A stretch of 64,000 nucleotides of DNA, from contig OX337232.1 of the NCBI GenBank assembly GCA_946965045.2, forward strand, positions 3,782,001 to 3,846,000, given 5' to 3'. The translations under genes were made by a program, and so were the position numbers. Positions 12,681 through 34,600 of the stretch are shown piece by piece. Source of the DNA: Epithemia pelagica. Its lineage: Eukaryota > Protista > Bacillariophyta. The notes below the pieces were generated by a model. It did not search any database, was not told where the DNA came from, and saw only the letters and a program-made list of their open reading frames with translations. The stretch's first letter is position 1, and each line of letters begins with the position of its first letter.

Positions 12681-12750
12681 GACTAAGGTAAGTAAATGAG
12701 CCGAAAGGGTGAGGACTGTCTTGATTCTTGGTTGTTGCGGTCTTTCACGC

Positions 12751-13230: not shown

Positions 13231-13383
13231 GGTGCGTAGTATCCAACAATCAAAGAGAATGGGAAAATTGTGACCACTCGTGTTCGCGTTTACAAAAACG
13301 AGTTCGTCTACTTGTTATCGCTAAAATAAAGTAGTCAGAACACAGGCTTCATCTACTTGTACATTTCTTATAGTTATTCAAAG

Positions 13384-14283: not shown

Positions 14284-14490
14284 GAGAAGGAGTAGGTGCT
14301 CTACAAGATTGATAGTTCTAATACAATAGTGAAATCTTAACGACAAACTACTACCTGATTACTCACTACCAATATTCATATGCATGTTTATGCTGTGTAC
14401 AGTGGCCAAGAAACAATTGCCTCTGAGTCGCTGTCGACAACACAAAGAAGTTTTTCATGTGATGTACTCTACTGGTACTCGTACCAAGAC

Positions 14491-16170: not shown

Positions 16171-16214
16171 TAGGTGCTGTCTGGCGACAGCAATGCTGTG
16201 ACTCGTGACCAGGT

Positions 16215-16997
16215 TGTTACAATTCTTTCTGAATCGTAGGGACATTGATGCTCGGTAGAGCAGACAATCAGGTAGGTCACCAACCGATACAAGCTTCTCA
16301 GGGTCAGAGAAGCAAGCAAGTCGAAGTCTATCAGAAGGATAGTCGGGACACAAAAGAAGATGTGATAAATGGTGATATTGTTAGATTGTGTGTTGATTAC
16401 TACGATAGGTCTACGTGAAATGTTCGGTCCTGCCAAGGGTCATGTGTCATAGGTTCTTGGCGGCAACAGGTTTGGAATAGTTGGAGTCGATTCATGTGAT
16501 GTATATGACATGTATATGTGGACGGATAACATATACAGGGTCAACAGCTCTTGCTTTGGGTTGGCATAGTTGTTTTCATGGCGCGCAGCTTGTTGACAAT
16601 TTGGAGATTGTGGGAATGGAAATATGGTCTCGCGTGATCGTGTGTCGTGCTTGGGATACTTAGACCGTTGGGTCGGATAGATGCCGACAGCGCTCGGATG
16701 TCGCTTGGGCGCGCTCGATGATTTCGGGCGCGTACGCTTAGGGCGTTAGTATAATGTCCGAGCAACGGCCAAATTTACGTCCGTTGTAATACCGCACGAC
16801 CCAGTTTAGTCTTGAGAGTGAGTTCGTCAATCTATTCTCACTTTTCATGATTTGCGAAGAAATATAGGTCGATATAGCGCGAAGCTAGGGAACATAGCTC
16901 GAAGCTAGATGGCATGATGCGATAGCACGAGGCTATGTGACATGGGGAATCGATGAGATGTAGAATCTAACCACCATAGACGGTGAGAATTCTAACA
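16215..16997 (-). repeat. 3' LTR
   Basis: TGTTACAATT...TTCTAACA. Only one mismatch to the other LTR noticed by eye (A16451 vs G24050). Confidence 0.97.
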
Positions 16998-19900
16998 CTC
17001 CCCACAACTCGTTGTTTCAGCCTTGTCATCATTGGATTTGTTGAGGTCTTGAACTTCTCCTTTCCAAAACAACAATGGCTTGAGCATGGGCCAAATAGAT
17101 ACGAAATCCCAATGTTTGCTAAGGATATCGGCAGGGTTGGTCTTTCCATCTTTCCAGTAGAATGCAACATACTTTGCTGCGATGGCTTCACAAACTCGGT
17201 GGTATGACAGAAGATGGTGTCTCTTGGATAGTATGGAATGAGGAACGGTTGCATTGAGCACAACAGATCTGTTATCTCCGTACATGTAACTTCGCTCTCG
17301 GATAGGTACTCCAAGGTAGCGGAGAGAATGTCGTAATTCTGTAATCTGATCTATTGCTGTCCTTGCAGCCACAAACTCGGATCCATAGGTAGCAGTTTCC
17401 ACCGTGCTCTGTCTCTTGCTGTACCAGTCAATAGGTGTTCCGTTCAACAAATGTAGAACAGCAGTGACGGATTTACCAGTGACTATGTCATGCATGAGAT
17501 TGGCATCAACATAATGAGTTGTGGTAACATAGCGGCCAAGAGGTGTTGGGCAGTCTTCAGGAATACGTTCACTTGCATTCGAATAGACAGTGCGAGTCCA
17601 ATCAAATTCTTGGGTAGGAAGACTTGAATAATCAGGCTCTCCAATCCTAAATCTGATTGCGCCTTCTGGGAGATGTGCAAGGTATCCATAGATACGCTTG
17701 GCTCTATCAAGATGTCCTTTCCTCGGAGCAGCACGAAAGCGTGATAGCGTCATTGTAGCGGTGAAGACGTCGAAACGACCAATAGTGATCACCCATTGGA
17801 GTTGTCCAATCAGAGTTTGGAAATGGCTAGTACCTTCTTCATCAAGGAGCTCAGAATCATCCAATTCAGGATGGTCTCCACCAATAAGAGGTGTTTTGGC
17901 TTTCTTGGGTTTCTCCTTGAAGATTCGTTCGAAAGTGTCCATCATCTTACCAATGTAGCGTCTTGGATCTGCTACTAATGTTCCATCAGAATCCTTGGTG
18001 TAACAACATCCCAAGTGGAAATCAATGGGTCCATCTCCTTTGAGTTTGAAGTTGTATTTCTCCTTCAGGATCTTGCAGATATTCCCAGGATCAGTAGAAA
18101 TAATGGCTAAGTCATCAACGTATACGGCAATGTATTCGTAACAGTCTTCTCCAGGTGCTTTCCTCATCCAGATATCCGGATCTGCTTTGCTTGGTGAAAA
18201 TCCCATGTCTGTCAAAACATCGAATAAGACATCATGCCAGCGTGCGCCTGATGACTTCAATCCATAAAGTGCCTTGTATATAATCAGGATGTGACCTTCT
18301 AATTCCTTGAATTCGGGTCCTGCGACAATGAAAATTTTCTCCCCTGTCAAAGCTTCCAGATATGCGTTTCCAATATCTGCTCCCCATATTTCCAAGTCAT
18401 TCAAAGTACCCAGGAATAAGGCAATGCGGAGGTTGCGAATGGAAACAACACCTGAATAGATTGTCTCAACGGGTTCTTTTGTGAGATGTCCATCTGCGAC
18501 AAGTCTTGCTTTATGTCGTCCATCATGTTTTACGTCAAAGACAAGATGTACACGTATCTTATGATATCCTTCAGGTGCATTGGATACTTTCCCTTTAATG
18601 AAGATGGCTTTCCCAAAATCCTTGAATGTTTTGTAGGACTGGATCTGTGACAATTCTAATTCTGTTGCATCCTGCCACTTTGTGTTGCCATGTTGTTTAT
18701 CAAGAGCGACAGCTTCCTCATAATTGCGTGGTACTTGAAAGCCAAACTTATACTTGACGGAATGGTGAACTTGTTTAATCCTTGACTGTTTGGCTGCTCG
18801 AATGAGACGTTTGCTTGTTTTGACATAACGTTTCAAATGCTTCCATCCAGGTTCGTTGAGTAAACCATGTTTCTTTCCATAAATTGCTACAGTGATCGGA
18901 TCATCATTGGCGATGAGTGATAAGGGTTCATAGGTAGTCTCCCCAGTTTCCCAATCAACAAGCAAATATATTTGCTCCCCTTGTAATCTGGATCAGTTGT
19001 GTTCAGTGGGCCTTGATGGGCAATGACGTCCCTGAACCTGAAAAGATTATCTCCAGAGGTTTGAGCTTGGTTATCTCGTTCGATATACTCCATGAGTTGA
19101 TTATAGGATATCATCTCATCAACATCAGAATTTGTCTTTCGGTAGATGTACTTGACACGTTCTTCCTGTTTCGTTGCTTCTTCATTAAGATCAATGACTC
19201 GTTTGATGACACGTGCACGGTGTCGCTCCCCATTTTCTTCTGTGTCGCATAGTAATGTGCGTCCTATCATGTCGTCAAAATCGATCGTGGGCATTGGTTT
19301 GGATGGATCTTCACTATCACTGCGAATGAAGACAGTGTCAGCTTGCTTATCATTGTCATCCTTCTCAGACGAATCCTCCCCTGAAGGTCGATCCACACGT
19401 AGGTTAGGTGTAGTGGATTCAACACGGCGAACAGCAGAACGGTAGATTATCTGGTTATCCTGGGTGAGAATCTTCCAAGTAAAAGAATCACCAACGTTGT
19501 GAGCAAAACCAACCCAGTGGCCAAGTTTCTCATCAGAAGAAGATGGATATGAACCGGAAGTGGGTTCAGCGGGGTTGACACGGTAGTAAACCTCATCCCA
19601 GAAAGGAAAGAACAAGAGATGAGTAATGTCAGGTGGGCGTCCGGAGAGAGCCTCAAGAGGAGTGCGACCGGAATGGGTGGGTGATGATGCATGGTTCAAT
19701 AAGTCACAGACATACTCAAGGCAAAGAAGCCAGGTGTTGGCAGGGCAACCAGTGGCATTCATGAGAGCGTTGGTCGTACGTTTAACGGTCTGGTAACGGT
19801 TTTCAGCCTTATTCTGGTGTTGATGATAAGGTTCAGATCGATACTCCCCAATAAGCAAAGTGCGAAGAATGTCTTTGACCTTTTGAGAGATGAGAGATGA

Positions 19901-21256
19901 ACCACCATCACTGATAAGAGTCTCCATGGCACCACGAAACCGGATGTTGTCCTGAAGAGTATTGACAAACTGTTTGGTTGACTTGATCCCATAGATATCA
20001 GTAACCAGAGTATCTCGACCAACAAAGATTTGTGCGACTTTACCGCCATGGTCAACAGCAGGGGTGTCGGAGAAAACCGAGTCAGTAGCAACGGGTTCAT
20101 GGCGTCGAGGTATATTAAGGACCGGATTGCGAGCCTTGAAATGTTTCTTGAGGGTGTCGTGGTCAAAAGTAATGCTACCATTACGTGTAGTGTGCTTGAA
20201 CGTATCGGCAATAACATCTTCAGATTGCCAACCAAAGAATGGACGGAACTTCTTCCAGTCATACGCTTCCTGGTAACGACGGTGGACAGAGGCATGAAGT
20301 GTAGGATCATTACCTTCTGCGTCAGCATAGATAGAAAAGAAGGGTGCGTCGTCAGGTCCATGATCGTATGGGGGATCCAAAAGGAGATTGAGGTTACAAA
20401 CAACACGATCAGTGTACTCCCCATAGTTGTCATATGGATGGTTCGACATACTACCATCAGTCTTGACGTGTTTCCAATCAGGATCATTGTCAGAGGGTGT
20501 GGGAGAATACGAATGGTCCAGAACACCAGGATCCCATGTGTCGGGTGACGTGAAGATGATCTGAGGTAAGGTATCCATGTCATCGTCGCTGGGGATACCC
20601 AAGGAGTGGATGTAGGCTAACCCATCCTTGATGTGAAGGGGTATAGCACGACCATCAAGTGTAGTGATGCGTTGTTTACCATCAACTTTAACAGATCGTT
20701 CATCAACAGCAAGTCCGAAATGCTCGAATTGACCAGGAGCATGGATAGATAAGCCCTTTCCATAATAAGCATATTCATTGAAGATGCCGACAATAGGTCC
20801 ATCATTGGTCTCAAACTTTGCGGCACATGTGACGACAGGAAGTCCAGTAAGTTCATGGTTATCAATACCCACAATAGTGATATGGCGGCCAGTCTTAGAA
20901 AGGATGCGCATGTCAGAACCAGCAAGTCCTCCATTAGCACCACGGTCAATCAATTGATTTCCTGGTAAAGTAGATTTCCTGGAAAACAAATAGCGTGGAA
21001 CATGTCCTGCTTGTTTATGCATGTTGGCTTTGAAAGTAACCTTCTTGCTCGTCTTGGACTTGGCGTTAGAAAGAACACTAGTCAGGTCAGTTGCCGGGTG
21101 ATTGATATCAGTCGTCATGGCTTGGTTGATAAATTGTGTAACCGGATCTGAATCATCTGGATGCTCAGGGGCTACGCCAGGTGAGTCGTCATCAGATGCA
21201 ACTTGGTTGGGGTCAGGATCAGGTTCCGGATCAATGTCGAGGGCATGTGTTTGCAC
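16992..21256 (-). CDS. pol: Copia pol (protease-integrase-RT-RNase H), split by a 1-bp frameshift near 18965
   Basis: PR LIDRGANGG. IN ATDSVFSD / LISDGG / KAENRY. RT KARLVADGH, KALYGLKSSGARW, VYVDDL. RH HYVDANL, TYGSEF, YGDNRSV, NPADILSK. Restoring one base gives KYNLLVDWETGETTYEPL. Confidence 0.93.
16998..17005 (-). other. Polypurine tract (GTGGGGAG)
   Basis: Abuts the 3' LTR on the element's sense strand. Confidence 0.8.
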
Positions 21257-21274
21257 TTTCCTCGGTGTTATTGA

Positions 21275-22677
21275 TTAAGGTGCTTGAATCATCTTGTTAT
21301 ACTCACTGATCAACTTACGATCTTCTTCAGAAAGTTTGAACCATAGGTCACGCGGTAGACTAACCTTGGACGAAGAGGATGGAGATTCAGATGTCGCTTT
21401 GGTGTTGTGGACATGATACTCCATATCATCTTGTGAGGTTATGTCAGCATCTGTATCTTGGCCATATAGTGATTCATGTTGTTTGACATGTCGACGGCGA
21501 CTATGAACAGATGACTGGGTTGCTTGATCATGGTCATAAGCTGCGTCTAGAAGGAGACGGAAGTATGATTGATAGCAAAGGGATTTTGCACCGGATTTGG
21601 TGTTCACCACATTATCCAAGATCTTGACTCGGCGGAGATCAGGTACCTTTTCTACAGCTTGCATGAGGAAGGTCATCCTGGTATGATCAGGGATGCAATC
21701 AGACAATGTCACTAGATTGTCTAGCAAACGTAGCTGCTCTTGAAAGTGTAGAAGAAATTGACGTGTTGTTCCGCGCCATGTGTCGTCAAGACGTAGATTG
21801 GAAATGTAGTTGGTTAAACGGAGGACTTCTCGCTTTGCTAGGTCGGATTCGGTATGCAAAGAGTGTAACTTCTGCAATACGGCACGCGCATCTTCATCAT
21901 GTTCATGTTCACGTACATAGGCTCGACCTTGGTCAGTCTGAATGATACGGACAAGAACGGAGTAAAGAAATACTTGTTGCTCTTAAAAAGTTCCTCGGCA
22001 TACTCATCATCATGGGGTGGTGTGTATTTGAAATTCAGAACGTTGGATAGGCCTTGAGCCTTAGCTGTAGTCTTGAATACACGCCAGAATGAATCGTAGT
22101 ATCGTTCATCCTTGAATACCTCATATGCAGTTGCGTCGCGCTTAGTTCCCTTTCTGAATGCTGTAAGGTCTTGTTGAGATTGGGATGCGGCAGTAACTGT
22201 GCTGACAGATTTCACAGATGACGGTGACTTCATTGGCGAGACTGGAACTTGGCTAGATGGTCCCTTAGAGAAATCTGTGTTGATCCTCCAAGTGTTGAAC
22301 TCTTTCCTTGTTAGTTTCATCCAGTCGCTATTGGATAGCTCGTCTTGAATTTCATTGGTCTTGTATATGGCCCAATAAGCCAAGAGCTTGATCTGCTGTC
22401 TTGTGGGGCCTTGTAGATCATGTGTCTGTTTGTTGACCTTGTATTGTGTCAGTTCCTTCATGGATTCCTCGGTATTAGTTTGCATATACGAGATAACATG
22501 GGTAATGTTCTCAAAACCATGGTATTTCATCCACTTCATTAAGTAGTCGGCCCTTTCTTTGGTAAAGAATTGGCAGACAGTAAATATGATGTGGTCGAAT
22601 AGGTCTGTGTTCGAGACATTGTCTTGGTTATCTTCTCCCTTAGGAGTCGTAGGTGTCTTGGGTGATTGAGGATCCAT
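21275..22677 (-). CDS. gag: Copia gag, split by a 1-bp frameshift near 21983; ends in a TAA in frame with pol
   Basis: ORFs 21838..22677 and 21275..21877 join into a gag-like protein (FRKGTKRDATAY...EELF/EQQVFLYSVL...LTNYISNLRLDDTWRG). Confidence 0.8.
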
Positions 22678-22997
22678 GGTGTTATTTGGTTGGTTCGATG
22701 TTTATTTAATGTGCGGTGTGATGTGGTTTATTTAATGTGTGATGTGATGTGAACCCGGATGTACCACGTGTGCCACGTATGTACCACGTATGTGATACCC
22801 GGATGTGTGTTGTGATGTGCGACTCCTGGAAATTTCCGTTGATTCCGACAAATTTTCGCCGAGTTTCAACAAATTTTCGCCGAATTTTCGCGATTTGACG
22901 GGAATGTGTGGCGTGTTGTGCGACCAAGGGTACCCGGATGTGCGTTGAGTTTAAGTCTTGGAAAGCTTTTGAGAGGACGGGAGTTAACTATGAGTAA

Positions 22998-23777
22998 TTA
23001 AGCTTCGGTCTCCGAATCCCCACTCTCTTCCGAATGATCAGAGTCGTTTCCAGGCTCAGATGGGGCAGCACAAGCAACAGGAGAAGGGGTATCACCTTCA
23101 GCCAGGTGATTCTCGACCTCGGTACGCAAAGGGAAGATAGTTGCACGATGGTCCTCGATGGTATGGACCTCGTGGATGTAGGCAACGTAGTTATCTAGGC
23201 GTACAACGTTAGGAGGCAGAGGGCAAGTCGTCGCGTTCACGACGTGGATGGTATTGTAGTATCCAGTTGGGCGCTCGAAGGTTAGGAAGCGGAGGTGGAC
23301 AGTACGGATGGGGTTGCCCGAGAGGGCGGCCAAGATGAGGCGACGCCTCGGAGAACGATGAAGTTGGTCGTTCAGACGGTCAATGTCTTCTTGGTCGACG
23401 ATGTGGGTCACCGATTGGAACTGGCGTTCGATCTGGGTCTCCCCACGGATGATCTCGGGATCGAAGGTCGAACAAGTTGGTTGACGGAAGTACTTGATAT
23501 GATCAGCAATCAACCGGGTGGTACGACGGGATCGAGAAGGGACGAGCCGACGAGGCGGACTCGGGGGCCGAAGCAACGGCGCAGGGATCGGAGCGTGAGG
23601 CTGGGTTGGAGTCTCGAATGGGTTGCTGTTAGAACTGTCGACGGAGATGTTGACCGATGTGTTGGCTGCCTTCGGCGTCGGCACCAGTTCCTGCTGCACC
23701 AGGGTATCGGGCTGCCCGGGATGCAGGTTGGCTCGATAGATCTGTCGTACAGGAGTGATAAGCTCGTTAGTATCCAT
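22998..23777 (-). CDS. Extra sense ORF between PBS and gag (259 aa, unknown)
   Basis: ATG-started ORF beginning ~25 bp after the PBS; no recognisable domain. Confidence 0.5.
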   Translation of the reverse strand: MDTNELITPVRQIYRANLHPGQPDTLVQQELVPTPKAANTSVNISVDSSNSNPFETPTQPHAPIPAPLLRPPSPPRRLVPSRSRRTTRLIADHIKYFRQPTCSTFDPEIIRGETQIERQFQSVTHIVDQEDIDRLNDQLHRSPRRRLILAALSGNPIRTVHLRFLTFERPTGYYNTIHVVNATTCPLPPNVVRLDNYVAYIHEVHTIEDHRATIFPLRTEVENHLAEGDTPSPVACAAPSEPGNDSDHSEESGDSETEA

Positions 23778-23802
23778 GAAACCACAAGGAAATAAGCTTT
23801 GA

Positions 23803-23813
23803 GACTGTTAATC
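23803..23813 (-). other. Primer-binding site GATTAACAGTC, complementary to the anticodon arm of tRNA-Asn(GUU)
   Basis: Directly follows the 5' LTR. Its reverse complement GACTGTTAATC is the pos. 30-40 anticodon stem-loop pattern of eukaryotic tRNA-Asn. No TGG start as expected for 3'-CCA priming. Confidence 0.7.
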
Positions 23814-24596
23814 TGTTACAATTCTTTCTGAATCGTAGGGACATTGATGCTCGGTAGAGCAGACAATCAGGTAGGTCACCAACCGATACAAGCTTCTCAG
23901 GGTCAGAGAAGCAAGCAAGTCGAAGTCTATCAGAAGGATAGTCGGGACACAAAAGAAGATGTGATAAATGGTGATATTGTTAGATTGTGTGTTGATTACT
24001 ACGATAGGTCTACGTGAAATGTTCGGTCCTGCCAAGGGTCATGTGTCATGGGTTCTTGGCGGCAACAGGTTTGGAATAGTTGGAGTCGATTCATGTGATG
24101 TATATGACATGTATATGTGGACGGATAACATATACAGGGTCAACAGCTCTTGCTTTGGGTTGGCATAGTTGTTTTCATGGCGCGCAGCTTGTTGACAATT
24201 TGGAGATTGTGGGAATGGAAATATGGTCTCGCGTGATCGTGTGTCGTGCTTGGGATACTTAGACCGTTGGGTCGGATAGATGCCGACAGCGCTCGGATGT
24301 CGCTTGGGCGCGCTCGATGATTTCGGGCGCGTACGCTTAGGGCGTTAGTATAATGTCCGAGCAACGGCCAAATTTACGTCCGTTGTAATACCGCACGACC
24401 CAGTTTAGTCTTGAGAGTGAGTTCGTCAATCTATTCTCACTTTTCATGATTTGCGAAGAAATATAGGTCGATATAGCGCGAAGCTAGGGAACATAGCTCG
24501 AAGCTAGATGGCATGATGCGATAGCACGAGGCTATGTGACATGGGGAATCGATGAGATGTAGAATCTAACCACCATAGACGGTGAGAATTCTAACA
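23814..24596 (-). repeat. 5' LTR
   Basis: 783 bp, near-identical to 16215-16997. Confidence 0.97.
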
Positions 24597-24777
24597 CAGG
24601 TCGTGATTGTTGTGTTCGGAAACGAAAAGAATGTGAAGCCGAGTCGAGTTCTCCTTTCTTGTTGTGTTTTCTTTCTTGAGCCCCTTCTGGGCTCAACAAA
24701 GTCGTAAGCATTGGGACGTGCGACCAGCACTGAGAGAACAGAGCAGCAAGTACCGTGTTTGATTGTTGTTTTTAACC

Positions 24778-25362
24778 ATGGCCCAATCATCCAAAGACGG
24801 GTGGATCGACTGGAGAAAGTCCGAAAGTCGATCCATCTTGTTGCTGGACTTGGAAAGCGGCGTTCTTCCACTTGATATCACAGCCCAGGAAGCTTGGGAG
24901 ATCTACGCCTTGGAACCTGTGTTTATTGTTGAGGGTGTGGTCTTTGACCAATTCAAGGCCCGACTCGCAGGCCACCGGAAACAGGTGCGACGCGACCATG
25001 CTCAGCGTCAGCACGAAGAAGCGGCTCTCGTCCACGACCGTCAGTTGTATCCGCGTGCCTTCGTCAACCATCGTGCGGAACCAGTCTTCGACATGTCCGA
25101 AGCAAAGACTTTTTTGGAGCAAGATGTCGAATGTGGGAAGCCGCAGACGATGACAATGTCGGCGCTGTACCATTCGCGGCAGGCCTACCTCAAGTTTCGA
25201 CCAGACATCTTTCGACAACGCGTCTATCAAGAACAGCGTCGCCAGAAGTTTCTCGTGTACCTGGAGCAGAAACGAGTCCTCAAGGAAGAAGCTGCAGAGA
25301 AAAGGAGAAAGAAGGTCAGAGAAAAAGCGAGACAGACAAAAGAGAAAAGTGAAACAACTTAA
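24778..25362 (+). CDS. Transposon accessory ORF (194 aa, helical, two internally similar W/D-x-S-x-(A/S)-K/R...L-x-x-D...G units)
   Basis: ATG at 24778; stop ~28 bp before the right TIR. Confidence 0.65.
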   Translation: MAQSSKDGWIDWRKSESRSILLLDLESGVLPLDITAQEAWEIYALEPVFIVEGVVFDQFKARLAGHRKQVRRDHAQRQHEEAALVHDRQLYPRAFVNHRAEPVFDMSEAKTFLEQDVECGKPQTMTMSALYHSRQAYLKFRPDIFRQRVYQEQRRQKFLVYLEQKRVLKEEAAEKRRKKVREKARQTKEKSETT

Positions 25363-25389
25363 CGTCCTGACTGGCCGATGACTCCGTAG

Positions 25390-26143
25390 AACATTAACCC
25401 ATAGTAGCAGTTGTTTGATTGTTGCGTCGTTTGTGTTGTTGCGTCGTTTGTGGATTTGTGGATTTGTGGATTTGTGGATTTGTGGATTTGTGGATTTGTG
25501 GATTTGTGGATTTGTGGATTTGTGGATTTGTGGATTTGTGGATTTGTGGATTTGTGGATTTGTGGATTTGTGGATTTGTGGATTTGTGGATTTGTGGATT
25601 TGTGGATTTGTGGATTTGTGGATTTGTGGATTTGTGGATTTGTGGATTTGTGGATTTGTGGATTCGTCCAGACAAGGCTGTCGAAACAACCAGTCTGAAC
25701 CGCCATTTCCACCGTACCGTCGGCCATGGTCAACTTGCACGATGCACGACGATCGAGAAAAGAACACATAATCATTCATCATGTCAAACTCATCATGTTG
25801 CACATGGCGAAGAAATTTCGTGCCATGTGCTATGCAGTCAACTGTGACTGCATGCGATGCATTCGGGACTAATTTTTGGGGGGCTTTGGGGGAGCAGCAG
25901 AAAAACAATTCTACTTAGAATTTTCTATTTGTCTATTTAGGAACATGGCACGCTCAACAATTATCAACAATTGACAACATTTATCCACATCGCTCAACTC
26001 CGCATTGGGGGTATTGTAGTATAACGTCTTATAACGGTCTTAATAAGTAGAGCTATACAACAAAAAGTCTATACGACATCGTAGTTTGTGGAAGTTTGTC
26101 TATATTTGTATGTGGTCCACAAAAAATACCGAGTATCCCAGGC
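25390..26143 (-). repeat. Right terminal inverted repeat (~754 bp)
   Basis: Reverse complement of 11984-12680. Confidence 0.9.
25447..25662 (+). repeat. (TTTGTGGA)27 octamer array in the right TIR
   Basis: Perfect 8-bp tandem repeat, 216 bp; inverse of the left array. Confidence 0.95.
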
Positions 26144-26669
26144 ATTTAAGATTCAACAATTCCCAATTTTTGAACCCACGACACCATGGAGCATCTTCTT
26201 GTTGTGTCTCTCATTCTATTGTACTGCAATCGTAGAATTGGAACGAATGTCAATCGAAACAAACAAGGCGCATCCATTCGGTACTTGCATCTCTGAACTA
26301 GAGGTCCTTCTTCTTCTTCTTCTTCTTCTTCTTCTTTGGATGACGCGCCAGCAGGACAGCTGTAAATTTTGGTACATGGCGCAGCCCCATCGCCGAATGA
26401 CGACGCCGACGACGACAAGGACAACTCTTCACTATTCTTGCTCTCTTTGGAACTGTCCAGTGCAGCCTCCCCCACAAACCAACCACCAACAACGCGCATC
26501 CCCAAAACAATTCGAACAAGAAGGAACGTCCTGTCGTCGTGCAGACGTTTGCACCACGGCGTAACCCAAAAAAGGAAGCAGTGTGTTTTTTCACAATGAT
26601 TGATCGTATCATTATTCTCTCTCCTGGCGTACTAGCACACTCTGGGGCAAATCCCCGAACCGCAGTGTT

Positions 26670-26862
26670 AGTAAGACTACTTCACGGTGATTCATTCCTT
26701 TAGAGGAGGGTCGCCCGGCGCGAAGGGTAGAATGACGAGAAGGGCATATGTTCGAGGAGGGCGCATGCCCGACAAGACATATGCCCGTCGAGTCATTCTC
26801 CCGACAAGCCGGGCGCCCGACGAGGAAGGAATGAGAAATCACAGGGGAGTAATCTGCTTACT
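26670..26862 (+). ncRNA. Candidate structured RNA (or ssDNA element): rod-like hairpin with four repeated internal-loop modules
   Basis: Nested complementary arms: AGTAAG/CTTACT, GTGAT/ATCAC, TCATTCCTT/AAGGAATGA, GGG(T)CGCCCGGC/GCCGGGCGCCC, GGG(T)AGAATGAC/GTCATTCTCCC, GGGCATATGT/ACATATGCCC, GGGC/GCCC. Transcription is not shown by the sequence. Confidence 0.45.
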
Positions 26863-27581
26863 TTATATCTAGATATGTAGGTAGTGACTACCGCCCGGTT
26901 ATATTATGAGATGGGATGTCGCAGGGACATAATGTTCCTTTCGCGGTTCACCCATGATATCGCGCGATTCGCACGATCACTACTTCCCGGCTCTACAATA
27001 AAATTCTACTGTAAAATAAAAATGTGAGACGAACTACCTGCATAGCTAGGTATATAGTTAGTGTTGTGTTGCCCGCCTCTCTCATTGTCTGTCGCCTGTT
27101 GTGGTGATGGGGATGGTCCGGCGGAGGTTCGGCATCGGTCGCACAAAAAAAGAGAGGACACCTCCGGTCGCACACACCCAGGAGCGCCGGTCGCATCACA
27201 ACCACATCACCGGTCGCACCAAAACAAACCCGGATCTTCGAAAAGGATGCAGTGACATTCAAGAGAGATCCATCCATGCAGCAACCATCATGACCATAAT
27301 ACGGAGATATACTCGAGGAACGAGAGCGTCGTATCCTCTGGGGATGTGGTCGTTGTCTGGACCAGCATTCAAAACTCTTGGAACCAGTCCTCTGTCGTCG
27401 TCGAGAGAAGGAGAACGAGTGAGAAGGAACCAAGTGGCTCACAACATTCGAAATCGAAACCAACACCCAAATGGCAGTTGGGTGGTTCGGCCGTGCTCTT
27501 CTCGGGTTCTTCCGGACGGAGCAAGACGAGGAAGAGGACAATCATCCATCCCTATGTCACGTCCATGACAATAAAAACAAC

Positions 27582-30044
27582 ATGAATGACCAAGGGACCC
27601 TCCTCGCAGGCTCGTTTGTGGTGGATGGTTCGATTTGGGATGGACCGACGACGACTCGTGTTTTGTGTGGTTGGCGTGTCGTCGTATGGGTGTTCTGCTT
27701 CGTACTAATCCTCGCACTGGTGCTGACCACTCTCTTATGGATGTGCATGACCCGGCAACGTCGCTACTTGTCGCGAACTCGTCCTCTGGCCGAGATTCCC
27801 TACGTGGTACCACATGCACCCCATGCGTTGTTGGGACATTTGCCCTACTTGGGGCAAGCCCACAATGTCGTGGACGGACAAGCCCGGGTCGTCCGTGACG
27901 GTGCCAGTGGGGGACCCTTGGGCCTTGTCACGTTTTGGACGGTGCACACACCGACCGTGTCCGTCTTGGACGCTCGGACCATGCGTCGCTGGCTGTGTCA
28001 AAGCAGTGCCCGCTATCCCAGTCCGTTGCAAGCTCGGCATTTGCAACGCCTCGTGGGACCGTCGTCCGTCCTCTTGCACAATGGCGTGGCGTGGAAATGG
28101 CATCGGACCGTGATGCAGCAACATTCCTTTGTCGTATCGCCGTCGTCAGTGTCATCACCACAATCATCAGCATCGCAACAAGAACAACCACACGAGTCGG
28201 TCTTGGATGAGGCCTGTCGGACCTTTGCCCAAGCCTTGGTGGGAACCATGGTCCAAGAACAGCAAATGGCAACGGCAACACGACAGGAACAAGAAGAGGA
28301 CAACCAACCCGCAGGTTGGACCACGAATGCCTTGTCCATTGCTCGTCGGGCCACACTCCATGTCTTTGGACTGGCCGTCTTGGGCCATGATTTTCAGTGC
28401 TGTTGTCATTGTCGGGACGATGAGGACTCGTCGTCGTCGAGCACCTCCAGCACCACAAACCACAACAACAGCAACCCAACCAAGTGGCGCTTGGCACTGG
28501 ATCGTCCCGTGCCCGTCCTGGACCAAATGGCCCGCTTGCAACAAGAGTATACGCGACGACTCTTTCAATCGTCGTTGGACTGGTCTCGTCCCTGGTTGTA
28601 TCTGGCCGACCAATACTATTACGACTACGACCATAACCATCCCCATGGATGGTCCTCCACGTCCTGGTGGAATTTCTGGGTGGCGGATACCCCCGCCAAT
28701 CGACAACATGCCCAGGATTATCACGACTTGAGACACACCTTGCACGACATTGTGCAAGAACGACAACAACGACTGCAACGACAGCAGCAAGACGAGCACA
28801 CAACGACCAATGACAACCACAAGGACAAGGACAAGGACGACAACCGGACGGATTCCTCCCCTCGTCGCAACAACAATCATCATCGTCAAGTCTGGTTGGA
28901 TCGCCTATTGCTCGAGCAGCAACAAACCAATTCCCACCACAACGACAACACTCCACCCAAGGAACCGCAATCGCACTCGTCTTTTGATTGTGGCATGGAC
29001 TGGAACGACGCGGCCGCCGTAGCCGATTGGTTGGTGACAATCTTGTTTGGTGGTTATGATACCACCGCCTTGGCCGTCGGGTATACCTTGTACTTGTTGG
29101 CGCAGTTTCCCGCGCATCAAGAGCACTGTGCCCACGAAGCCGACCGAGTTCTTTCGTCTGGATCATTGTCCCACGACTCGTGGCACCAATTTCCATACAT
29201 TACGGCCTGCCTCTGGGAAGCCTTGCGATTGTATCCACCGGCCACTGTCACGGCTCGCAGTTTGGAACGACCCGTGACAGTGGATTTGACCCAGGAAGAC
29301 GACAATGATGATTGGAATCAGGAGGGGGAGGAGGAACCAGTGACCACGACAAGAACAAGAACCACAACAGCAAGGAGAGTGGACGACCAGTCCGACCCAC
29401 ATTCACCATCCAAACCAACCACAACCACCACAAAAACCAACAACAACAAACGAATCGTCACCTTGCCTCCCCAGACGCGCATCTTGTGTTCCTTTTATTG
29501 GATTCATCGCGACGGGCGAAACTTTGCCCGACCCTTGGAATTTTTGCCCCAACGATGGGTGCAACAACGACGAACCCAATCACACGAGCCATGTCACAAC
29601 ACCACAAGGGGCGACCACAGCCACACGACAAATCCGACGACGACGAGCAATTCTAGTATTTGGGAACCACGCACGGCAGACCCGGATCACAACCAGGACA
29701 ATTCGGTTCCGCGGGGCGATGTTCGAAATCACTTGGCCTTTTCAGCCGGGGGACGCAATTGTGTCGGACAAGGCTTGGCCCTCGACATGATTCCCCGTCT
29801 GTTGGCTCACGTGTTGCAATCGGTGCAAGTGGAAGCCTGTAGTGGTGGTGCGACGGGTTCCTGTAGCACGGACGACCAGGACGACCACACCGCGAGTCGG
29901 AGTCGTCCGAGTAAGGAGGAGGAGCCTGCATCCTCCTCCTCCTGCGTGGCCCCGGAATTGACCTTGGTCCGATATGGACTCAATGCCGTGCCCAAGGATG
30001 GAATTCCTCTCGTGTTTCGGTTGCGAAAACGACAAGGACAATGA
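27582..30044 (+). CDS. Cytochrome P450 with low-complexity loop insertions
   Basis: N-terminal TM anchor, P-rich hinge (PYVVPHAPH), I-helix LFGGYDTTA, K-helix EALR, PERF-like FLPQRW, heme motif FSAGGRNCVG. Confidence 0.92.
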   Translation: MNDQGTLLAGSFVVDGSIWDGPTTTRVLCGWRVVVWVFCFVLILALVLTTLLWMCMTRQRRYLSRTRPLAEIPYVVPHAPHALLGHLPYLGQAHNVVDGQARVVRDGASGGPLGLVTFWTVHTPTVSVLDARTMRRWLCQSSARYPSPLQARHLQRLVGPSSVLLHNGVAWKWHRTVMQQHSFVVSPSSVSSPQSSASQQEQPHESVLDEACRTFAQALVGTMVQEQQMATATRQEQEEDNQPAGWTTNALSIARRATLHVFGLAVLGHDFQCCCHCRDDEDSSSSSTSSTTNHNNSNPTKWRLALDRPVPVLDQMARLQQEYTRRLFQSSLDWSRPWLYLADQYYYDYDHNHPHGWSSTSWWNFWVADTPANRQHAQDYHDLRHTLHDIVQERQQRLQRQQQDEHTTTNDNHKDKDKDDNRTDSSPRRNNNHHRQVWLDRLLLEQQQTNSHHNDNTPPKEPQSHSSFDCGMDWNDAAAVADWLVTILFGGYDTTALAVGYTLYLLAQFPAHQEHCAHEADRVLSSGSLSHDSWHQFPYITACLWEALRLYPPATVTARSLERPVTVDLTQEDDNDDWNQEGEEEPVTTTRTRTTTARRVDDQSDPHSPSKPTTTTTKTNNNKRIVTLPPQTRILCSFYWIHRDGRNFARPLEFLPQRWVQQRRTQSHEPCHNTTRGDHSHTTNPTTTSNSSIWEPRTADPDHNQDNSVPRGDVRNHLAFSAGGRNCVGQGLALDMIPRLLAHVLQSVQVEACSGGATGSCSTDDQDDHTASRSRPSKEEEPASSSSCVAPELTLVRYGLNAVPKDGIPLVFRLRKRQGQ

Positions 30045-30199
30045 CGCAATTCCGGGGGAAACGAGACAGAGTTGTTTCTCGATTCTATCGTAAGAACGAG
30101 AGGAGACACACACACATCACGGTTTGTTTTGGTATTTGGCTGGTATCCATGAAAAAGAGAAAGGCCCGATTCTTCTTCCAGACTACCTACCTAGTTCAG

Positions 30200-31477
30200 A
30201 TGAAGAACCCAATCGAATCTCGCCCTCTAGTTGAAGACGTGGTGGGCGACACAAATCTTGAGGTGTTCTTTGTTGATATTGGTGGCATCGTGGCGTGTTA
30301 TTCGCACGAAGGAAAGCTCATCTGGAGCCGGGATATTCTAAGCTCACTAGGCTTTGGTAAATCCATAACTGGAGCCAGCCCTATGTCCCTTGGAGACGTT
30401 GATGGTGACGGATACCTTGATCTTGTAATGACGGTGGAAGTTAACAGTCGATGGCTGGTTCTTGCGTTTCAGGCAGCAAGCGGCAATGACTTAAAAAACT
30501 TTCCAATTGAGCTTGAAAAGCTACGGAAGGCCGGAAAATTCAAGAACAGGGAGAGTGATGAAAAGAAAGAACGCACACGCCTAGCGCAACCCTTGTTGGT
30601 GGATCTTCATGCCGACCAACATTATATTCTCGATTACATTCGGCGTGGTTCCCAAGCTTTCAGACGAGAAGTCGACATCGCACCAAGCGAATACACGCAA
30701 GGAGGGTCTTCTGCTGGGATCCACATCGTGCAACCTCTGGAAAAGCAATTGTACATTGTAGAGGGTGGATCTGGTTGTACACAAAAGGTTGTGATAGGTG
30801 AAGAAATAGGCACCATGGTTGAAGTTGATGACATCCACGGAACGAACCATTTGGACCTTCTTGTTGCTACCAAGGAGGGAAATATTGTAACACTTGAATC
30901 GTCTGCGAACTATCATCCGCTTAACACGTGGACCGGGGGAGATGTACGAGGGAAAAACTCTCATACTCATGGGTACAGCGCATCACAAGGCATATTCGTC
31001 CACGAGGTTAGTCGACAGTACAAAGACATATTTGGTGTCTATGTCCCAGTCACTTTCGAAGTATTCGACAACCGTCCAAACATCGATCAGGAACTGGGGA
31101 AACGGATATACAAAATTGAAGTTCGAGTTGGGTCGTCCTCACAACGGACTCTTCATAGAGTTGAAGTCCAGCAACCTGGAGTGTACACGGAGCGCATTTA
31201 TGTTCGATTCGGCCCGGGGTATTATAATCTCTGTGTTCTTATGAGTACCTCTCATGGCATTACGTACGAGGACTGCTTTGCGACAGGATACAACGTACAT
31301 TTTATGGCTGGATTTGGAGTAATGCTGTGGCTTCCACTGTTGGTTTCTTTTGTCACAATTCTGTTGTGCAGTGTCAGTAAGAAGGGGAATTGGGACGACG
31401 AAGACGGTGCCGAGGACGAACAAGAGAGCCGTGACAACCGCAGTCTTGGCATCTTGGGTAGAGCACTTCCTACCTAA
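30200..31477 (+). CDS. DEX1-like FG-GAP membrane protein, C-terminal half only (possibly truncated or a pseudogene)
   Basis: FG-GAP-like repeats (DVVGDTNLEV, GDVDGDGYLDLV, DDIHGTNHLDLLV) and a C-terminal TM (LWLPLLVSFVTILL). No signal peptide and no room upstream for the N-terminal half. Confidence 0.6.
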   Translation: MKNPIESRPLVEDVVGDTNLEVFFVDIGGIVACYSHEGKLIWSRDILSSLGFGKSITGASPMSLGDVDGDGYLDLVMTVEVNSRWLVLAFQAASGNDLKNFPIELEKLRKAGKFKNRESDEKKERTRLAQPLLVDLHADQHYILDYIRRGSQAFRREVDIAPSEYTQGGSSAGIHIVQPLEKQLYIVEGGSGCTQKVVIGEEIGTMVEVDDIHGTNHLDLLVATKEGNIVTLESSANYHPLNTWTGGDVRGKNSHTHGYSASQGIFVHEVSRQYKDIFGVYVPVTFEVFDNRPNIDQELGKRIYKIEVRVGSSSQRTLHRVEVQQPGVYTERIYVRFGPGYYNLCVLMSTSHGITYEDCFATGYNVHFMAGFGVMLWLPLLVSFVTILLCSVSKKGNWDDEDGAEDEQESRDNRSLGILGRALPT

Positions 31478-31609
31478 TTTCGTCCTACTTTAGTCATGTC
31501 ATTGAATGTGATGTCTAGAGAGCTATCCTACCCTTGAGATCTTGGGTAGAGCATACTTCCTGTCATCCAGATCAGAATGTGACGTCTAGAGAGTTATCCT
31601 ACCCTTGAG
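31451..31609. repeat. Imperfect tandem duplication (88 + 71 bp) spanning the 3' ends of two convergent genes
   Basis: Both units begin ATCTTGGGTAGAGCA(TA)CTTCCT and end GAATGTGA(T/C)GTCTAGAGAG(C/T)TATCCTACCCTTGAG. Confidence 0.85.
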
Positions 31610-34600
31610 CTTCGCGGTGTTCGACAGCTCTACTCTTTGTGCCTTACCTTTTTCAACGAGATCAGGTAAGCTATTTGACCGAGCAGATACAGTACCAGAC
31701 TGGCGCCAGAGAGTGATGTGCGTAAACTTGTTGAACGAAGCCGGTAGAGACGTGCCTTCATCGGTAGTTTTCGGAAGTTCCACCTCCAATGCAGCGGTTT
31801 TCCCATCCCATAGAACTGCACGAACTATGACTTCTGCTCCATGGCCTTCGACTTCTCCATACTTGAGTCGCATCTCGTCCTGCGAAGCGCTTACTTTGTG
31901 AACCAATGTCACGTGAGTTTTCAAGACGAACTTTTTGTCCGCGCAAAGACTTCCAACTAGGACATCATTGGCAGAATTTTTTCCTGTGATTTTTTTCCAT
32001 AAACTTTCTAGTCTCCTGTCATCGACATTCTTGAGTAGAAGATTGTGGACATCGTCGACGGATACGTCAACTGAAACGTAGTCAATCATTCTGGTAGCTT
32101 TCTTTTTCAGGTCTTCTTGGAATAGTTTGTCGTCGACATGATCAAAGATTTCACCTTGATCAGCTAGTTCCACCACTTTCTTCACCTTGTCCAGAAAAGC
32201 CTGCTGGGACACTTCCACACCAACTGTCAAGGAATTCAAATACGTTTGGTTTTCCTCCAGAGAAGTCCGTAGCCTTGACTCAAGATCGTCGAGATACTCA
32301 TCTTTTTCTTTTCCCACATCTTTGAAGCCATTTCGAGCTTGAATGGCTTCGACAAGGATATTCTTCAAATCAGTAGGAATGTCGACTTCATCGGATCGGA
32401 AGAAAGGACTCTCGAAGAAAGGAATCTCAATTGGCTCTCGAGCGATAAATGCTCCAGCATTTTCGAACTTCGCAGATAGAGAAGCCAAGAATTCATCAGC
32501 TGTTTCTCTTTCGTACAAGCAATAAAACATGACGACGATCATGCAAGCACGTTTATGCGACTGGTCCAGCTTTCCTGGGTGTGAATTGGGCGGTCGGGAC
32601 ATTACTCGGAGCATACATACGGCCAGATAAGTCAGACTGAAGGGGTATCGGTACGTCCTGTCCATACAGATCTCACCATCTCTCTTTCGGAAACCTTGAA
32701 CTACCGTAGTAGACAGTGCATGCTCCGGTATTGCTGGGACACCCACCGACGACGTGTCGGCGCATATCCCGGAAAGTGCATCCCAAGTGCCCGACGGCAC
32801 GTTCTTATCGGCTATGTAGAGACTTGAAATGTCTTGGCGTTTTTCCTTTGTCACTACTTGCCAGTATTTTCCTGGTGTCTTGTCACCCATTCTTACTTTG
32901 AGGTTTCTCCTGGGCTCTGTTCTCTTAGATAAAAACTCGTGTAGATTCAGCTCCGCCGATTCATCTATGAGACTCGACTTTCCGCATCCAGGAATCTGAG
33001 GGAAGAATACAAGTATCCCTATTGCAGAAGCAATGTCGTCCAGGTCATCGGTTTTCGAAAATTGCATTATGGGTTTGAGCAAAGTCTCGGTATCTTTCTT
33101 GGAATCTTCGTCTATCTCCATCGCATCGTTACTTGGAATCGCAGCCAAAGGCAAGTCGACTTTCACAGAGGCCGCATTCTTCCTCCATCCATTCAGACGA
33201 TTGAAAACGTTGTCCACCTTGTCCTCTCCGACAACTGATAAAATTTCATCCCATTCACAACCATAGTAGACAATGGCAGTTTTATCGTCAAGACGACCTT
33301 TCAGGATATTTCGGTATCGACCAGAAGAGTCTTCTAAGCAAACGGAACATACCGCTCCTTCCGTGGTCCCATTAGGAACTGCACTCAGTCCATCATAACG
33401 AATTTTACATCCCACTTGTTTGGCAACATAATCAGCCGCAGTTTTGGCAGTGTCTTCATCAGGTCCTACTACCACCACAAATCCATTGAAGGAGTCTCCC
33501 GATCGCTCGATTTTACCAGCGTCGTACAGCTCGATGAATTGTTCCAAATGCTCGAGGTAGTTGTCCTGACTCAAGGGTTGCAGTCCTGCGTCTCGTCTTC
33601 GTGAGTACTTCGACAACCGTGGCGCTGCATAGTCTGCCCACGCTCGGAAGAATGGCATCCATGTTTTGCGTGCTTCGGACGACATTTTCCACTTGGTTAA
33701 CAGATTGCTCGTGTATTTGACAAACCCCTCACTCCCTCCTTGTTTCAAGTGTTTGAGTCCGTTGCGACATCCAAAGGTTCGCACCATATACAGCAAAAAT
33801 TTCATTTTCAACATGAGACCTTTCTCTTCATCCAAGTCGGACATGAATGTTGTTTGATTGTGAGACAATTCGTTTGCGGAGAATTCGTCATCCGCGGAGA
33901 GTTCCAATGCAAATCCTCGAAAGAGGGCCATATCACCAGGACGCACACTTTTGCGATATTTCGAATGGGCATGGTCCAAAATTACATGAATGATACAGAG
34001 CCATCTCGAGAAGCCATAATTTGTTATTTCTTCCCGTACAATCGAATAATCAACACGGATATTCAGTCGATCCAAGTCCTCAATGACTTGAGCAATCCGT
34101 CGAGTCTCGACATCGTCGGAATCCCGCAATTTCCGAAGGACGGATGCCACATGTTTGGTTGCCGATTGGGACATTCGTACACCAATGCGGCGGTCCGGTG
34201 TCTCCAAGAGCTGTTTTACTTTGGATGCAAAAGAATTAGGCGCCTCGTCGTTAGTCGCGGATCTCATTTGAGCAAAAATGGTTCGAAGGTCGGTCGACAA
34301 GCATTTTGGCAACTTATTTTCGTAGTGACCTGCTGTAATCAACTCAAAACAATCGGGTAAACTGGATGGAATCTTTTTTGAACACAGATCGTCTGCGACC
34401 CTCGCCAAGGACGGCATGTCGCGATTGATCTCATTCTCATCCATAGGTTCCTTGCTGTTTTCGGGATGGGGGACGTATCGAATGACAATTCCTTCCAGGA
34501 TATCGCCCTGGAATTCGGTATGAGGATAGAGACTTCGCACTCGTGTTTCCGCTGCCTTTGTCAAGGTGTGTTCGACAAAGGAAGCCAAACTGGTTTCACG

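What the first reader, a model, noticed from the sequence alone, without database searches (positions are those of the whole stretch)
26670..26862. Rod-like fold with four copies of one 5x5 internal-loop module: candidate new structured RNA
Seen: a ~190-nt nested hairpin in which four successive stems each open with GGG/CCC and are flanked by the same symmetric loop. The loop pairs are GAGGA/GACGA (26703/26819), GCGAA/GACAA (26720/26803), GAGAA/GTCGA (26737/26787) and GAGGA/GACAA (26754/26771), consensus GMGRA-GGG / CCC-GWCRA. Each loop allows a central G-C pair bracketed by sheared G.A pairs, and two stems share a bulged U right after GGG. The stems differ in sequence while the non-complementary loops recur, which a simple inverted duplication does not explain. 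Inference: a multivalent protein-binding RNA (or ssDNA) scaffold on the + strand. I recognise no known family.
Basis: partly seen in the sequence, partly recalled or inferred. Interest (0 to 1): 0.85.

Follow-up and report, generated by a model that had tools for sequence, protein, structure and literature searches.

The report
Transposon end hairpin, not RNA gene
The striking 190-base hairpin is real, but it is the folded end of a small 393-base jumping gene present in many copies in this alga's genome, and its regular G-A mismatches and split-palindrome design suggest the element moves through a circular, possibly single-stranded, form.

Summary
Observation confirmed. Window 26670-26862 folds into one rod (z -12 as RNA, -9.9 as DNA). 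It carries four GNGRA-GGG / CCC-GWCRA 5x5 loops at the stated coordinates, and 16 of 21 mismatched oppositions are G.A on the + strand (P about 5e-8).

It is not a stand-alone RNA gene. It is the first 193 nt of a 393-bp dispersed repeat, 26669-27061.
- A second full copy, 94.5% identical with unrelated flanks, lies elsewhere in the same genome, and fragments lie at a third place.
- Summed contig depth over the hairpin core is about 100-370 times the single-copy flanks.
- The element has no terminal inverted repeats. It ends in TAGTAAG...TAGTTAG.
- Its last 22 nt pair with the 22 nt just after the hairpin, so joined ends form one continuous 239-nt rod.

Best reading: a non-autonomous element moved in trans through a circular intermediate by a tyrosine recombinase (Crypton- or DIRS-like). 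The rod would act as end-splint or recombination site, and the G.A loops would mark one strand.

I could not show the recombinase link. It rests on architecture. No RNA data exist, and Rfam is blank.

The scan has already reported the same kind of G.A hairpin at Crypton ends on other DNA of this genome. I confirmed its TAGT ends and split palindrome here, but not the recombinase.

The parts
26669..27061 (+). Whole 393-bp non-autonomous mobile element
   Evidence: L121:9905-10306 aligns end to end at 94.5% with unrelated flanks. Single-copy contigs of three runs stop at 26692-26698 and restart at 27033 (k=31). Loose ends show other flanks before 26669 and after 27061.
26669..26675 (+). Left terminal 7-mer TAGTAAG. 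It shares TAGT with the right terminus and is the likely crossover site.
   Evidence: Identical in window, L121 and the fragment L123:9510-9552. The L123 variant also starts with TAGT.
26670..26862 (+). 193-nt rod hairpin, the finding itself. Apex is GCAT at 26764-26767.
26703..26761 (+). Four 5'-arm modules GNGRA-GGG at 26703, 26720, 26737 and 26754, period 17
26768..26824 (+). Four 3'-arm modules CCC-GWCRA at 26768, 26784, 26800 and 26816, period 16
   Evidence: (family D5).
26863..26885 (+). Extension arm just 3' of the hairpin. It is complementary to the element's right end and contains the local palindrome ATATCTAGATAT.
26886..27032 (+). 147-nt internal domain with no long ORF. It becomes the far loop of the rod in a circular form.
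   Evidence: Conserved in L121. It contains the internal TAGT (minus strand, 26981-26984) that was hit by another insertion in L123.
27033..27054 (+). Right-end arm that pairs with 26864-26885 when the two ends are joined
   Evidence: 19 Watson-Crick + 2 G.T + 1 G.A of 22. Smith-Waterman score 16, reached by 0.035% of random window segments. blastn e=0.02 within the window.
27055..27061 (+). Right terminal 7-mer TAGTTAG
   Evidence: Same in window, L121 and the minus-strand copy L123:9859-9941. Each is followed by a different flank.

Best explanation
The hairpin is the left-terminal structure of a 393-bp non-autonomous transposable element (26669-27061). The element belongs to a family, with related subfamilies that share the hairpin core, present in tens to hundreds of copies in this eukaryotic algal genome.

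Shown:
- The element has no terminal inverted repeats.
- It is bounded by the near-identical 7-mers TAGTAAG and TAGTTAG.
- Its right end is complementary to the sequence directly after the hairpin. When the ends are joined at the shared TAGT, one uninterrupted 239-nt rod results (86 Watson-Crick + 4 G.T pairs).
- The rod is interrupted almost only by periodic purine-purine (G.A) 5x5 loops. These exist on the + strand only.

Inferred mechanism:
- The element is excised and inserted through a circular intermediate, by site-specific recombination at TAGT.
- The enzyme is a tyrosine recombinase supplied in trans by an autonomous Crypton-type (or DIRS-type) element.
- The 3' half of the rod (26766-26885) acts like the internal complementary region of DIRS elements. 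It is a splint that holds the left and right termini side by side on a single strand.
- The regularly spaced G.A loops make the folded + strand stable and distinguishable from the - strand, and possibly serve as repeated protein contact points.
For: Mobile and multi-copy:
- A second full copy with unrelated flanks, in the same assembly.
- Truncated and nested copies in L123.
- Summed contig depth of 19,000-32,000 over 26682-26828 and 1,800-6,400 over 26829-27122, against 69-86 in the flanks.

Ends: identical 7-mers in three copies, no inverted termini.

Insertion at TAGT: the L123 hairpin variant interrupts another copy exactly at that copy's internal TAGT.

Split palindrome. Circular ssDNA folds at -75 kcal/mol against -42 +/- 5 for shuffles.

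Strand asymmetry:
- 16 G.A of 21 mismatches on +, pyrimidine-pyrimidine on -.
- 4 G.T wobbles on +.
- Rod energy -137.3 on + against -116.2 on -.

Pairing maintained across variants:
- Most copies carry TA>AT at 26780-81, together with a 5'-arm variant GGGCAAT that restores pairing.
- The L123 subfamily has a different but still self-complementary outer stem (CCGGTGTCG / CGACACCGG).

Published precedents:
- Cryptons have no TIRs, have short terminal direct repeats, a proposed circular intermediate and abundant non-autonomous derivatives (PMC3212892).
- The DIRS-1 ICR is complementary to both termini and is essential. Intermediates are single-stranded, and insertions are flanked by a trinucleotide (PMC7192593).
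Against: - I found no autonomous element that shares these termini.
- The two tyrosine-recombinase-like genes I could fetch from this genome have no such hairpin attached and no demonstrable link to the hairpin 6 kb away. These are L123 15934-18024 (NDC10_II plus a weak Phage_int_SAM_1 match) and L124 8227-10566.
- Only two full copies, one variant and two fragments were seen as sequence. The rest is inferred from contig depth, which is not a true copy number.
- No empty site was recovered, so target duplication cannot be told from a crossover core.
- Some copies close a loop into normal pairs: module 3 in L121, and the outer module in a read variant. Individual loops are therefore not indispensable in every copy. 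Those copies may be dead.
- Arm-to-arm gene conversion could keep a palindrome paired without selection on a folded strand.
Confidence: 0.6

Rival explanations
1. Non-autonomous partner of a DIRS-like retrotransposon (tyrosine recombinase plus reverse transcriptase) rather than of a DNA-only Crypton. The element would be transcribed and copied into single-stranded cDNA. The hairpin's 3' arm would serve as the ICR that aligns the two termini before circle closure and recombinase-mediated integration.
For: - The architecture matches the DIRS ICR logic: an internal stretch complementary to both extremities laid side by side, and trinucleotide-flanked insertions (PMC7192593).
- The structure is strand-specific, as expected for a single-stranded intermediate.
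- A first-stage scan note places a DIRS-like element in this window at about 56-64 kb. My Pfam scan of its three long ORFs found no RT or recombinase domain.
Against: - No sequence similarity between the 393-bp element and the rest of the window, including the DIRS-like region.
- DIRS elements have long inverted terminal repeats, which this element lacks.
- No promoter, poly(A) or RNA evidence.
- Non-autonomous DIRS derivatives of this size are not something I found described.
Confidence: 0.15
2. Single-strand 'peel-and-paste' or rolling-circle element moved by an HUH (Rep-type) nuclease, as in IS200/IS605, Helitrons or Replitrons. The big hairpin would be the nuclease's recognition structure, and TAG would be the cleavage or target motif.
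For: - No TIRs.
- The same short motif sits at the left boundary and at the right end.
- A strand-specific hairpin at one end.
- HUH enzymes typically recognise DNA hairpins (PMC10288648).
Against: - The ends are not 5'-TC...CTRR-3', and the hairpin is 193 nt at the 5' end, not a 16-20-nt hairpin near the 3' end. The Helitron definition here is from established knowledge.
- Replitrons were not detected in diatoms (PMC10288648). That this genome is a diatom comes from scan notes only.
- The split palindrome across the joined ends is not a feature of these families.
- No HUH gene was seen in any fetched locus.
Confidence: 0.1
3. Source of small RNAs. Read-through or own transcription of the many copies would give a long imperfect hairpin RNA that is diced into siRNA- or miRNA-like RNAs. 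This would be either a host silencing trigger against the family or an exapted regulator next to the P450 gene.
For: - A very stable RNA fold.
- The copy sits about 410-520 bp upstream of a cytochrome P450 gene.
- TE-derived hairpins are a common origin of small-RNA loci (established knowledge).
Against: - No RNA run is available, so this is untested.
- The 5x5 purine loops every 16-17 nt and the conservation of mismatches are not what Dicer substrates need.
- It does not explain the split palindrome or the terminal 7-mers.
- It is compatible with, not exclusive of, the transposon reading.
Confidence: 0.08
4. One reading: an independent structured non-coding RNA gene that acts as a multivalent protein-binding scaffold.
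For: A repeated loop module with differing stems, and strand asymmetry.
Against: - It is a multi-copy element with defined ends and unrelated flanks.
- Copies decay, with 5.5% divergence, a 9-nt duplication and loop closure in L121.
- No Rfam match.
- No homologues in the metagenome or viral scans.
- No RNA evidence.
Confidence: 0.04

Closest known systems
Crypton DNA transposons and their non-autonomous derivatives (Goodwin et al. 2003; Kojima and Jurka 2011, PMC3212892)
   Same: - No terminal inverted repeats.
[quoted passage not shown]
- A proposed circular intermediate.
- Non-autonomous derivatives far more numerous than autonomous copies.
- Present in stramenopiles, including a diatom.
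   Different: - Published Cryptons are described as lacking structured ends.
- Here about 60% of the element is one long imperfect palindrome, split by the termini and studded with periodic G.A loops.
- The published stramenopile group (CryptonS) mostly has TATGG termini of 5-6 bp. Here the termini are TAGT(A/T)AG.
- No recombinase gene was linked to this element in my hands.
Internal complementary region (ICR) of DIRS-1-type tyrosine-recombinase retrotransposons (Cappello et al. 1985; PMC7192593)
   Same: - An internal stretch is complementary to the left and the right extremities laid side by side, so a single strand can bring its own ends together.
- Insertions are flanked by the same short motif.
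- A single-stranded intermediate is implied.
   Different: - The DIRS ICR is 88 nt, exactly complementary and far from the ends, and the element has long inverted LTRs and an RT.
- Here the 'ICR' is the 3' arm of a terminal hairpin: 97 nt against the left end and 22 nt against the right end.
- Pairing is deliberately imperfect (G.A loops).
- The element is 393 bp with no genes.
Folded single-stranded recombination sites of bacterial tyrosine recombinases: integron attC (PMC5027507) and the CTX-phage attP(+) hairpin
   Same: - An imperfect palindrome whose unpaired features exist on one strand only and tell the recombinase which strand to use.
- The crossover point lies inside the folded structure.
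   Different: - attC sites are 57-141 nt with two or three extrahelical bases and a central bubble.
- This rod is 239 nt with four or more symmetric 5x5 purine loops at 16-17-nt spacing.
- It is eukaryotic.
- No biochemical evidence exists. This is a functional analogy, not homology.
Parvovirus terminal hairpins with a mismatched 'bubble'
   Same: A purine-rich mismatch inside a terminal palindrome makes the two arms non-equivalent once the hairpin is copied into duplex. This gives asymmetric processing.
   Different: It is a viral replication origin processed by an HUH nickase. It has a single bubble rather than a periodic array.
MITEs and Foldback elements
   Same: Small, gene-less and multi-copy. 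They fold into a long hairpin.
   Different: - In MITEs and Foldback elements the hairpin is formed by the two termini (TIRs), and insertions carry fixed-length target duplications.
- Here the palindrome centre is 97 nt from the left end.
- The termini are direct, not inverted, repeats.

Membership tests
Crypton (tyrosine-recombinase DNA transposon), non-autonomous derivative | Shares both termini with an autonomous element that encodes a tyrosine recombinase | tested here: inconclusive
   No such element was recovered. The recombinase-like genes in L123 and L124 carry no matching hairpin or termini. Only unverified scan notes assert the link.
Crypton (tyrosine-recombinase DNA transposon), non-autonomous derivative | No terminal inverted repeats and no long terminal direct repeats | tested here: met
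   The left end begins TAGTAAGACTAC. The right end, read as its reverse complement, begins CTAACTATATAC. The two are not alike.
Crypton (tyrosine-recombinase DNA transposon), non-autonomous derivative | Short (4-6 bp) direct repeats at both termini | tested here: met
   TAGT is shared within TAGTAAG and TAGTTAG in three copies.
Crypton (tyrosine-recombinase DNA transposon), non-autonomous derivative | Circular excision product with joined ends | not testable with these tools
   Only modelled: joined ends give a continuous rod. The reads laid showed no 27054>26669 joint, but they are assembled contigs.
DIRS-like retrotransposon derivative | Internal region complementary to both extremities | tested here: met
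   26766-26885 pairs with 26669-26765 and with 27033-27054.
DIRS-like retrotransposon derivative | Inverted (or split direct) long terminal repeats, and dependence on a reverse transcriptase | tested here: not met
   No terminal repeats longer than 7 nt. No similarity to the DIRS-like element of the same window. RT dependence is not testable.
Helitron (non-autonomous) | 5'-TC ... CTRR-3' ends, insertion between A and T, and a short hairpin 10-12 nt from the 3' end | tested here: not met
   The ends are TAGTAAG...TAGTTAG on + and CTAACTA...CTTACTA on -. The hairpin is 193 nt and lies at the other end.
MITE / TIR DNA transposon | Terminal inverted repeats plus a fixed-length target-site duplication | tested here: not met
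   No TIRs. The flanking repeat is part of the conserved termini.
Any Rfam RNA family | Covariance-model match | tested here: not met
   No match at gathering score in the window, and none at E<=1 on 26600-27100. No tRNA-like part.
Hairpin-RNA / miRNA-like locus | Transcription and discrete small RNAs from the arms | not testable with these tools
   No run on record as RNA holds the stretch.

The most novel reading that the evidence does not exclude
A eukaryotic family of recombinase-driven transposons moves through a folded single DNA strand. The 239-nt rod formed by the joined ends would be the actual recombination substrate. Its 5x5 tandem G.A loops, spaced every 16-17 nt, would be repeated docking modules and the strand selector, in the way extrahelical bases work in bacterial integron attC sites. 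Small gene-less derivatives such as this 393-bp copy would show that the rod plus about 150 nt is all that is needed in cis.
Probability: 0.25. Interest if true: 0.8.

Novelty: new variant of a known kind. Interest (0 to 1): 0.55.

Why it matters
Cryptons and other tyrosine-recombinase transposons of eukaryotes are the least understood class of mobile DNA. Their ends are described as featureless, and no transposition intermediate has been characterised for the DNA-only forms.

This 393-bp element consists almost entirely of a strand-specific, mismatch-patterned rod that closes across its own termini. It would define the minimal cis requirements of such a family. It also points to a concrete, testable intermediate: a circle, possibly single-stranded, recombined at TAGT.

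It is also a caution for RNA-structure scans. Extreme fold z-scores with apparent 'designed' loop modules can be transposon end structures.

Tried and rejected
- **Rfam.** Searched at gathering score on the whole window and at E<=1 on the element. Nothing found. No tRNA.
- **Second copy in the window.** None. No other comparable hairpin in the window.
- **Metagenome scan with a three-module pattern.** It returned 120 loci, all chance or low-complexity purine repeats. None had the partner modules or similarity to the element.
- **Viral contig scan with a 25-nt exact string.** Nothing.
- **RNA evidence.** No RNA run holds the stretch. The four runs are contigs of one study.
- **Fishing for copies by translating the hairpin.** The + frame gave P0001 (L121) and P0002 (L123). 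P0003 is an unrelated low-complexity ORF. The - frame gave nothing.
- **Fishing for the autonomous partner.** The NDC10_II-type recombinase ORF of L123 has only one distant relative, in L124. Neither carries the hairpin. Extending L123 by 10 kb (L126, L127) found no remainder of the interrupted copy.
- **Sampling more of the genome through exact TE proteins.** The 789-aa pol and the 677-aa piggyBac-like transposase each returned only their own locus.
- **Hairpin core as the ~193-bp repeat unit that scan notes report in piggyBac-like ends.** There is no tandem array and no similarity around the one piggyBac-like gene I could see. Not excluded genome-wide.
- **Empty site.** The P450 ORF as I translated it is not on record. 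The neighbouring gene led back to the identical assembly.
- **Replitron and Helitron readings.** Rejected on end sequences and on the literature.

Full report
**1. The observation**

- As RNA the + strand folds into a single nested rod of -106.7 kcal/mol. Shuffles give -57.9 +/- 4.1, so z is -12.0.
- The - strand gives -94.8, z -10.6.
- With DNA parameters the values are -52.5 (z -9.9) and -47.4 (z -8.2).
- It is the most stable 200-nt segment of the whole window.

The four 5'-arm modules GNGRA-GGG start at 26703, 26720, 26737 and 26754, with period 17. The four 3'-arm modules CCC-GWCRA start at 26768, 26784, 26800 and 26816, with period 16. A two-module pattern is expected 0.07 times by chance in the window.

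I laid the fold out as a ladder. On the + strand 16 of 21 mismatched oppositions are G.A and 2 are other purine-purine pairs. On the - strand the same places are pyrimidine-pyrimidine. The binomial probability of 16 or more of 21 at a 0.2 expectation is about 5e-8.

**2. It is part of a multi-copy element**

No RNA family matches, and there is no second copy in the window. Laying the contigs of four public runs of this organism gave the key result.
- Summed depth is 69-86 in the single-copy flanks in runs X1 and X2.
- It is 19,000-32,000 over 26682-26828 and 1,800-6,400 over 26829-27122.
- Single-copy contigs stop at 26692-26698 and restart at 27033 (k=31).
- Loose ends show other sequences before 26669 and after 27061.

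Depth summed over contigs is not a true copy number. It does say that the hairpin core occurs on the order of a hundred or more times, and the rest of the unit some tens of times.

I then translated the hairpin and searched the protein collections. This found two short called ORFs. Both are from ENA assembly ERZ21939226, which is the same genome: its contig ctg1347l is identical to the window over 21 kb.
- L121:9905-10306 is a complete second copy of window 26669-27061, 94.5% identical, with unrelated flanks.
- L123 holds a 43-nt left-end fragment at 9510-9552.
- L123 also holds a right end in minus orientation (9859-9941, 98.8% identical). It is cut exactly at its internal TAGT by a diverged hairpin that begins TAGTATTAAT (9938 onward).

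**3. Anatomy of the element**

The unit is 393 bp, 26669-27061. It has no terminal inverted repeats. It begins TAGTAAG and ends TAGTTAG in all copies seen. It carries no ORF of note.

The last 22 nt before the terminal 7-mer (27033-27054) are complementary to the 22 nt that follow the hairpin (26864-26885). The match is 19 Watson-Crick pairs, 2 G.T and 1 G.A.
- The Smith-Waterman score is 16, reached by 0.035% of random window segments.
- blastn finds the same inverted pair.

If the two ends are joined at the shared TAGT, hairpin and extension stack into one 239-nt rod. It has 86 Watson-Crick and 4 G.T pairs and only a T.T at the joint. Its energy is -137.3 kcal/mol on the + strand and -116.2 on the - strand. 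A circular single strand of the whole element folds at about -75 kcal/mol with DNA parameters, against -42 +/- 5 for shuffles.

The palindrome is therefore split by the element's own termini. The 3' arm (26766-26885) is complementary to the left end and to the right end laid side by side.

**4. Are pairing and loops maintained?**

Pairing is maintained.
- Most copies carry TA>AT at 26780-81, and a matching 5'-arm variant (GGGCAAT...) restores the pairs.
- The L123 subfamily has a different but self-complementary outer stem.

Loops are mostly maintained.
- The three inner modules are the same in the diverged L123 hairpin.
- About 90% of depth reads G at 26740, which turns the window's GAGAA into the consensus GAGGA.

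Loops are not maintained in every copy. L121 has changed module 3 into the near-perfect complement of its partner. One read variant has a fully complementary outer module.

The other differences between the window and L121 are uncompensated: C>T changes and a 9-nt duplication. This is what one expects for decay after insertion.

**5. Mechanism**

Shown: a small, gene-less, multi-copy element with direct-repeat termini, a split palindrome and a strand-specific mismatch pattern.

Inferred: movement through a circle by site-specific recombination at TAGT, by a tyrosine recombinase supplied in trans. This inference rests on two published precedents.
- Cryptons have no TIRs. They have short terminal direct repeats, a proposed circular intermediate and abundant non-autonomous derivatives (PMC3212892).
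- DIRS-1 has an internal complementary region that pairs with both extremities and is essential for transposition. Its intermediate is single-stranded, and its insertions are flanked by a trinucleotide (PMC7192593).

The closest functional analogy for one-strand-only unpaired features that guide a tyrosine recombinase is the integron attC site (PMC5027507).

The G.A and G.T bias means that only the + strand can form the stable rod. This is what one expects if a single strand is used at some step, or if the two arms must be told apart in duplex form.

**6. What I could not show**

I found no autonomous partner. Two recombinase-like genes of this genome were fetched: L123 15934-18024, with NDC10_II at 1e-9 and a weak Phage_int_SAM_1 match, and L124 8227-10566. 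Neither has the hairpin or the termini attached. Extending the L123 locus did not help.

No RNA data exist for this organism in the runs served, so the RNA and small-RNA rivals are untested. No empty site was recovered. That the organism is a diatom comes from the scan's notes. My own checks show only a eukaryote.

**7. Relation to earlier notes of this scan**

Other agents reported rods with G.A mismatches at the ends of Crypton elements elsewhere in this genome, with TAGT direct repeats and a palindrome that becomes whole when the ends are joined.

I treated these as leads. On this element I independently reproduced the TAGT termini, the split palindrome and the G.A strand bias. I did not reproduce the association with a recombinase gene.

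What this locus adds is a 393-bp gene-less derivative. If the family assignment holds, it delimits the cis-acting parts.

**8. Verdict**

The finding is a real and unusual structure. It is a transposon end, not a new RNA gene.

Against the published literature I searched, structured, mismatch-patterned split palindromes are not a described feature of Crypton-type elements. I therefore rate it a new variant of a known kind, of moderate to good interest.

Confidence is high that it is a mobile-element terminus. It is moderate for the recombinase and circle mechanism, and low to moderate for a folded single-strand substrate.

Noticed in passing
window 25383-25715: Perfect tandem array of an 8-nt unit (about 40 copies), inside what a first-stage note calls the right end of a PIF/Harbinger-like transposon (11984-26143). 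Contig depth at 25800-26139 is about 7 times single copy.
   Followed up: no
window 26302-26337: A (CTT)n microsatellite about 330 bp upstream of the element. The reads tool skipped it as a repeat.
   Followed up: no
window 27471-30044 (+): A cytochrome P450 gene (Pfam 1e-36). The assembly's gene call starts at 27582. The element therefore sits about 410-520 bp upstream, in its likely promoter region.
   Followed up: no
window 26866-26877: The perfect 12-nt palindrome ATATCTAGATAT, centred on CTAG, lies inside the extension arm of the rod. Its partner at the right end reads GCTAGG (27045-27050). Scan notes say piggyBac-like elements of this genome insert at CTAG. No connection was shown.
   Followed up: partly
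L123:9859-9960 (same genome, ctg1248l): A nested insertion. A minus-strand copy of the 393-bp family is interrupted at its internal TAGT by a hairpin of a related subfamily. The junction itself forms a perfect 10-bp hairpin (CCGGGAAGTA / TACTTCCCGG).
   Followed up: partly
L126:6305-13186 (same genome, ctg1248l): A tyrosine-recombinase-like gene (NDC10_II plus a weak SAM-like N-terminal domain), a P2RX7_C-like ORF and a 677-aa piggyBac-type transposase (DDE_Tnp_1_7) lie side by side within 7 kb. This may be one composite element.
   Followed up: no
L126:3054-3774: A perfect (AGAA)180 microsatellite, called as a 275-aa ORF by the assembly's gene caller.
   Followed up: no
window 26888-27061, run X4: In run X4 a 1,827-nt contig, at about 15 times that run's gene-level depth, starts in the element's right part and continues past 27061 into other sequence. 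In the same run the hairpin core is almost absent (depth 4.8), while in the other three runs it is the deepest bin. X4 may be a different library type, possibly RNA. Its kind is not on record.
   Followed up: no
window 26758 / 27025: At single-copy depth in three runs, one contig joins sequence like ...26758 to 27025... through 10 other letters (ATACTCCAAA). This is probably another, internally deleted relative of the element elsewhere in the genome (table 5c).
   Followed up: no
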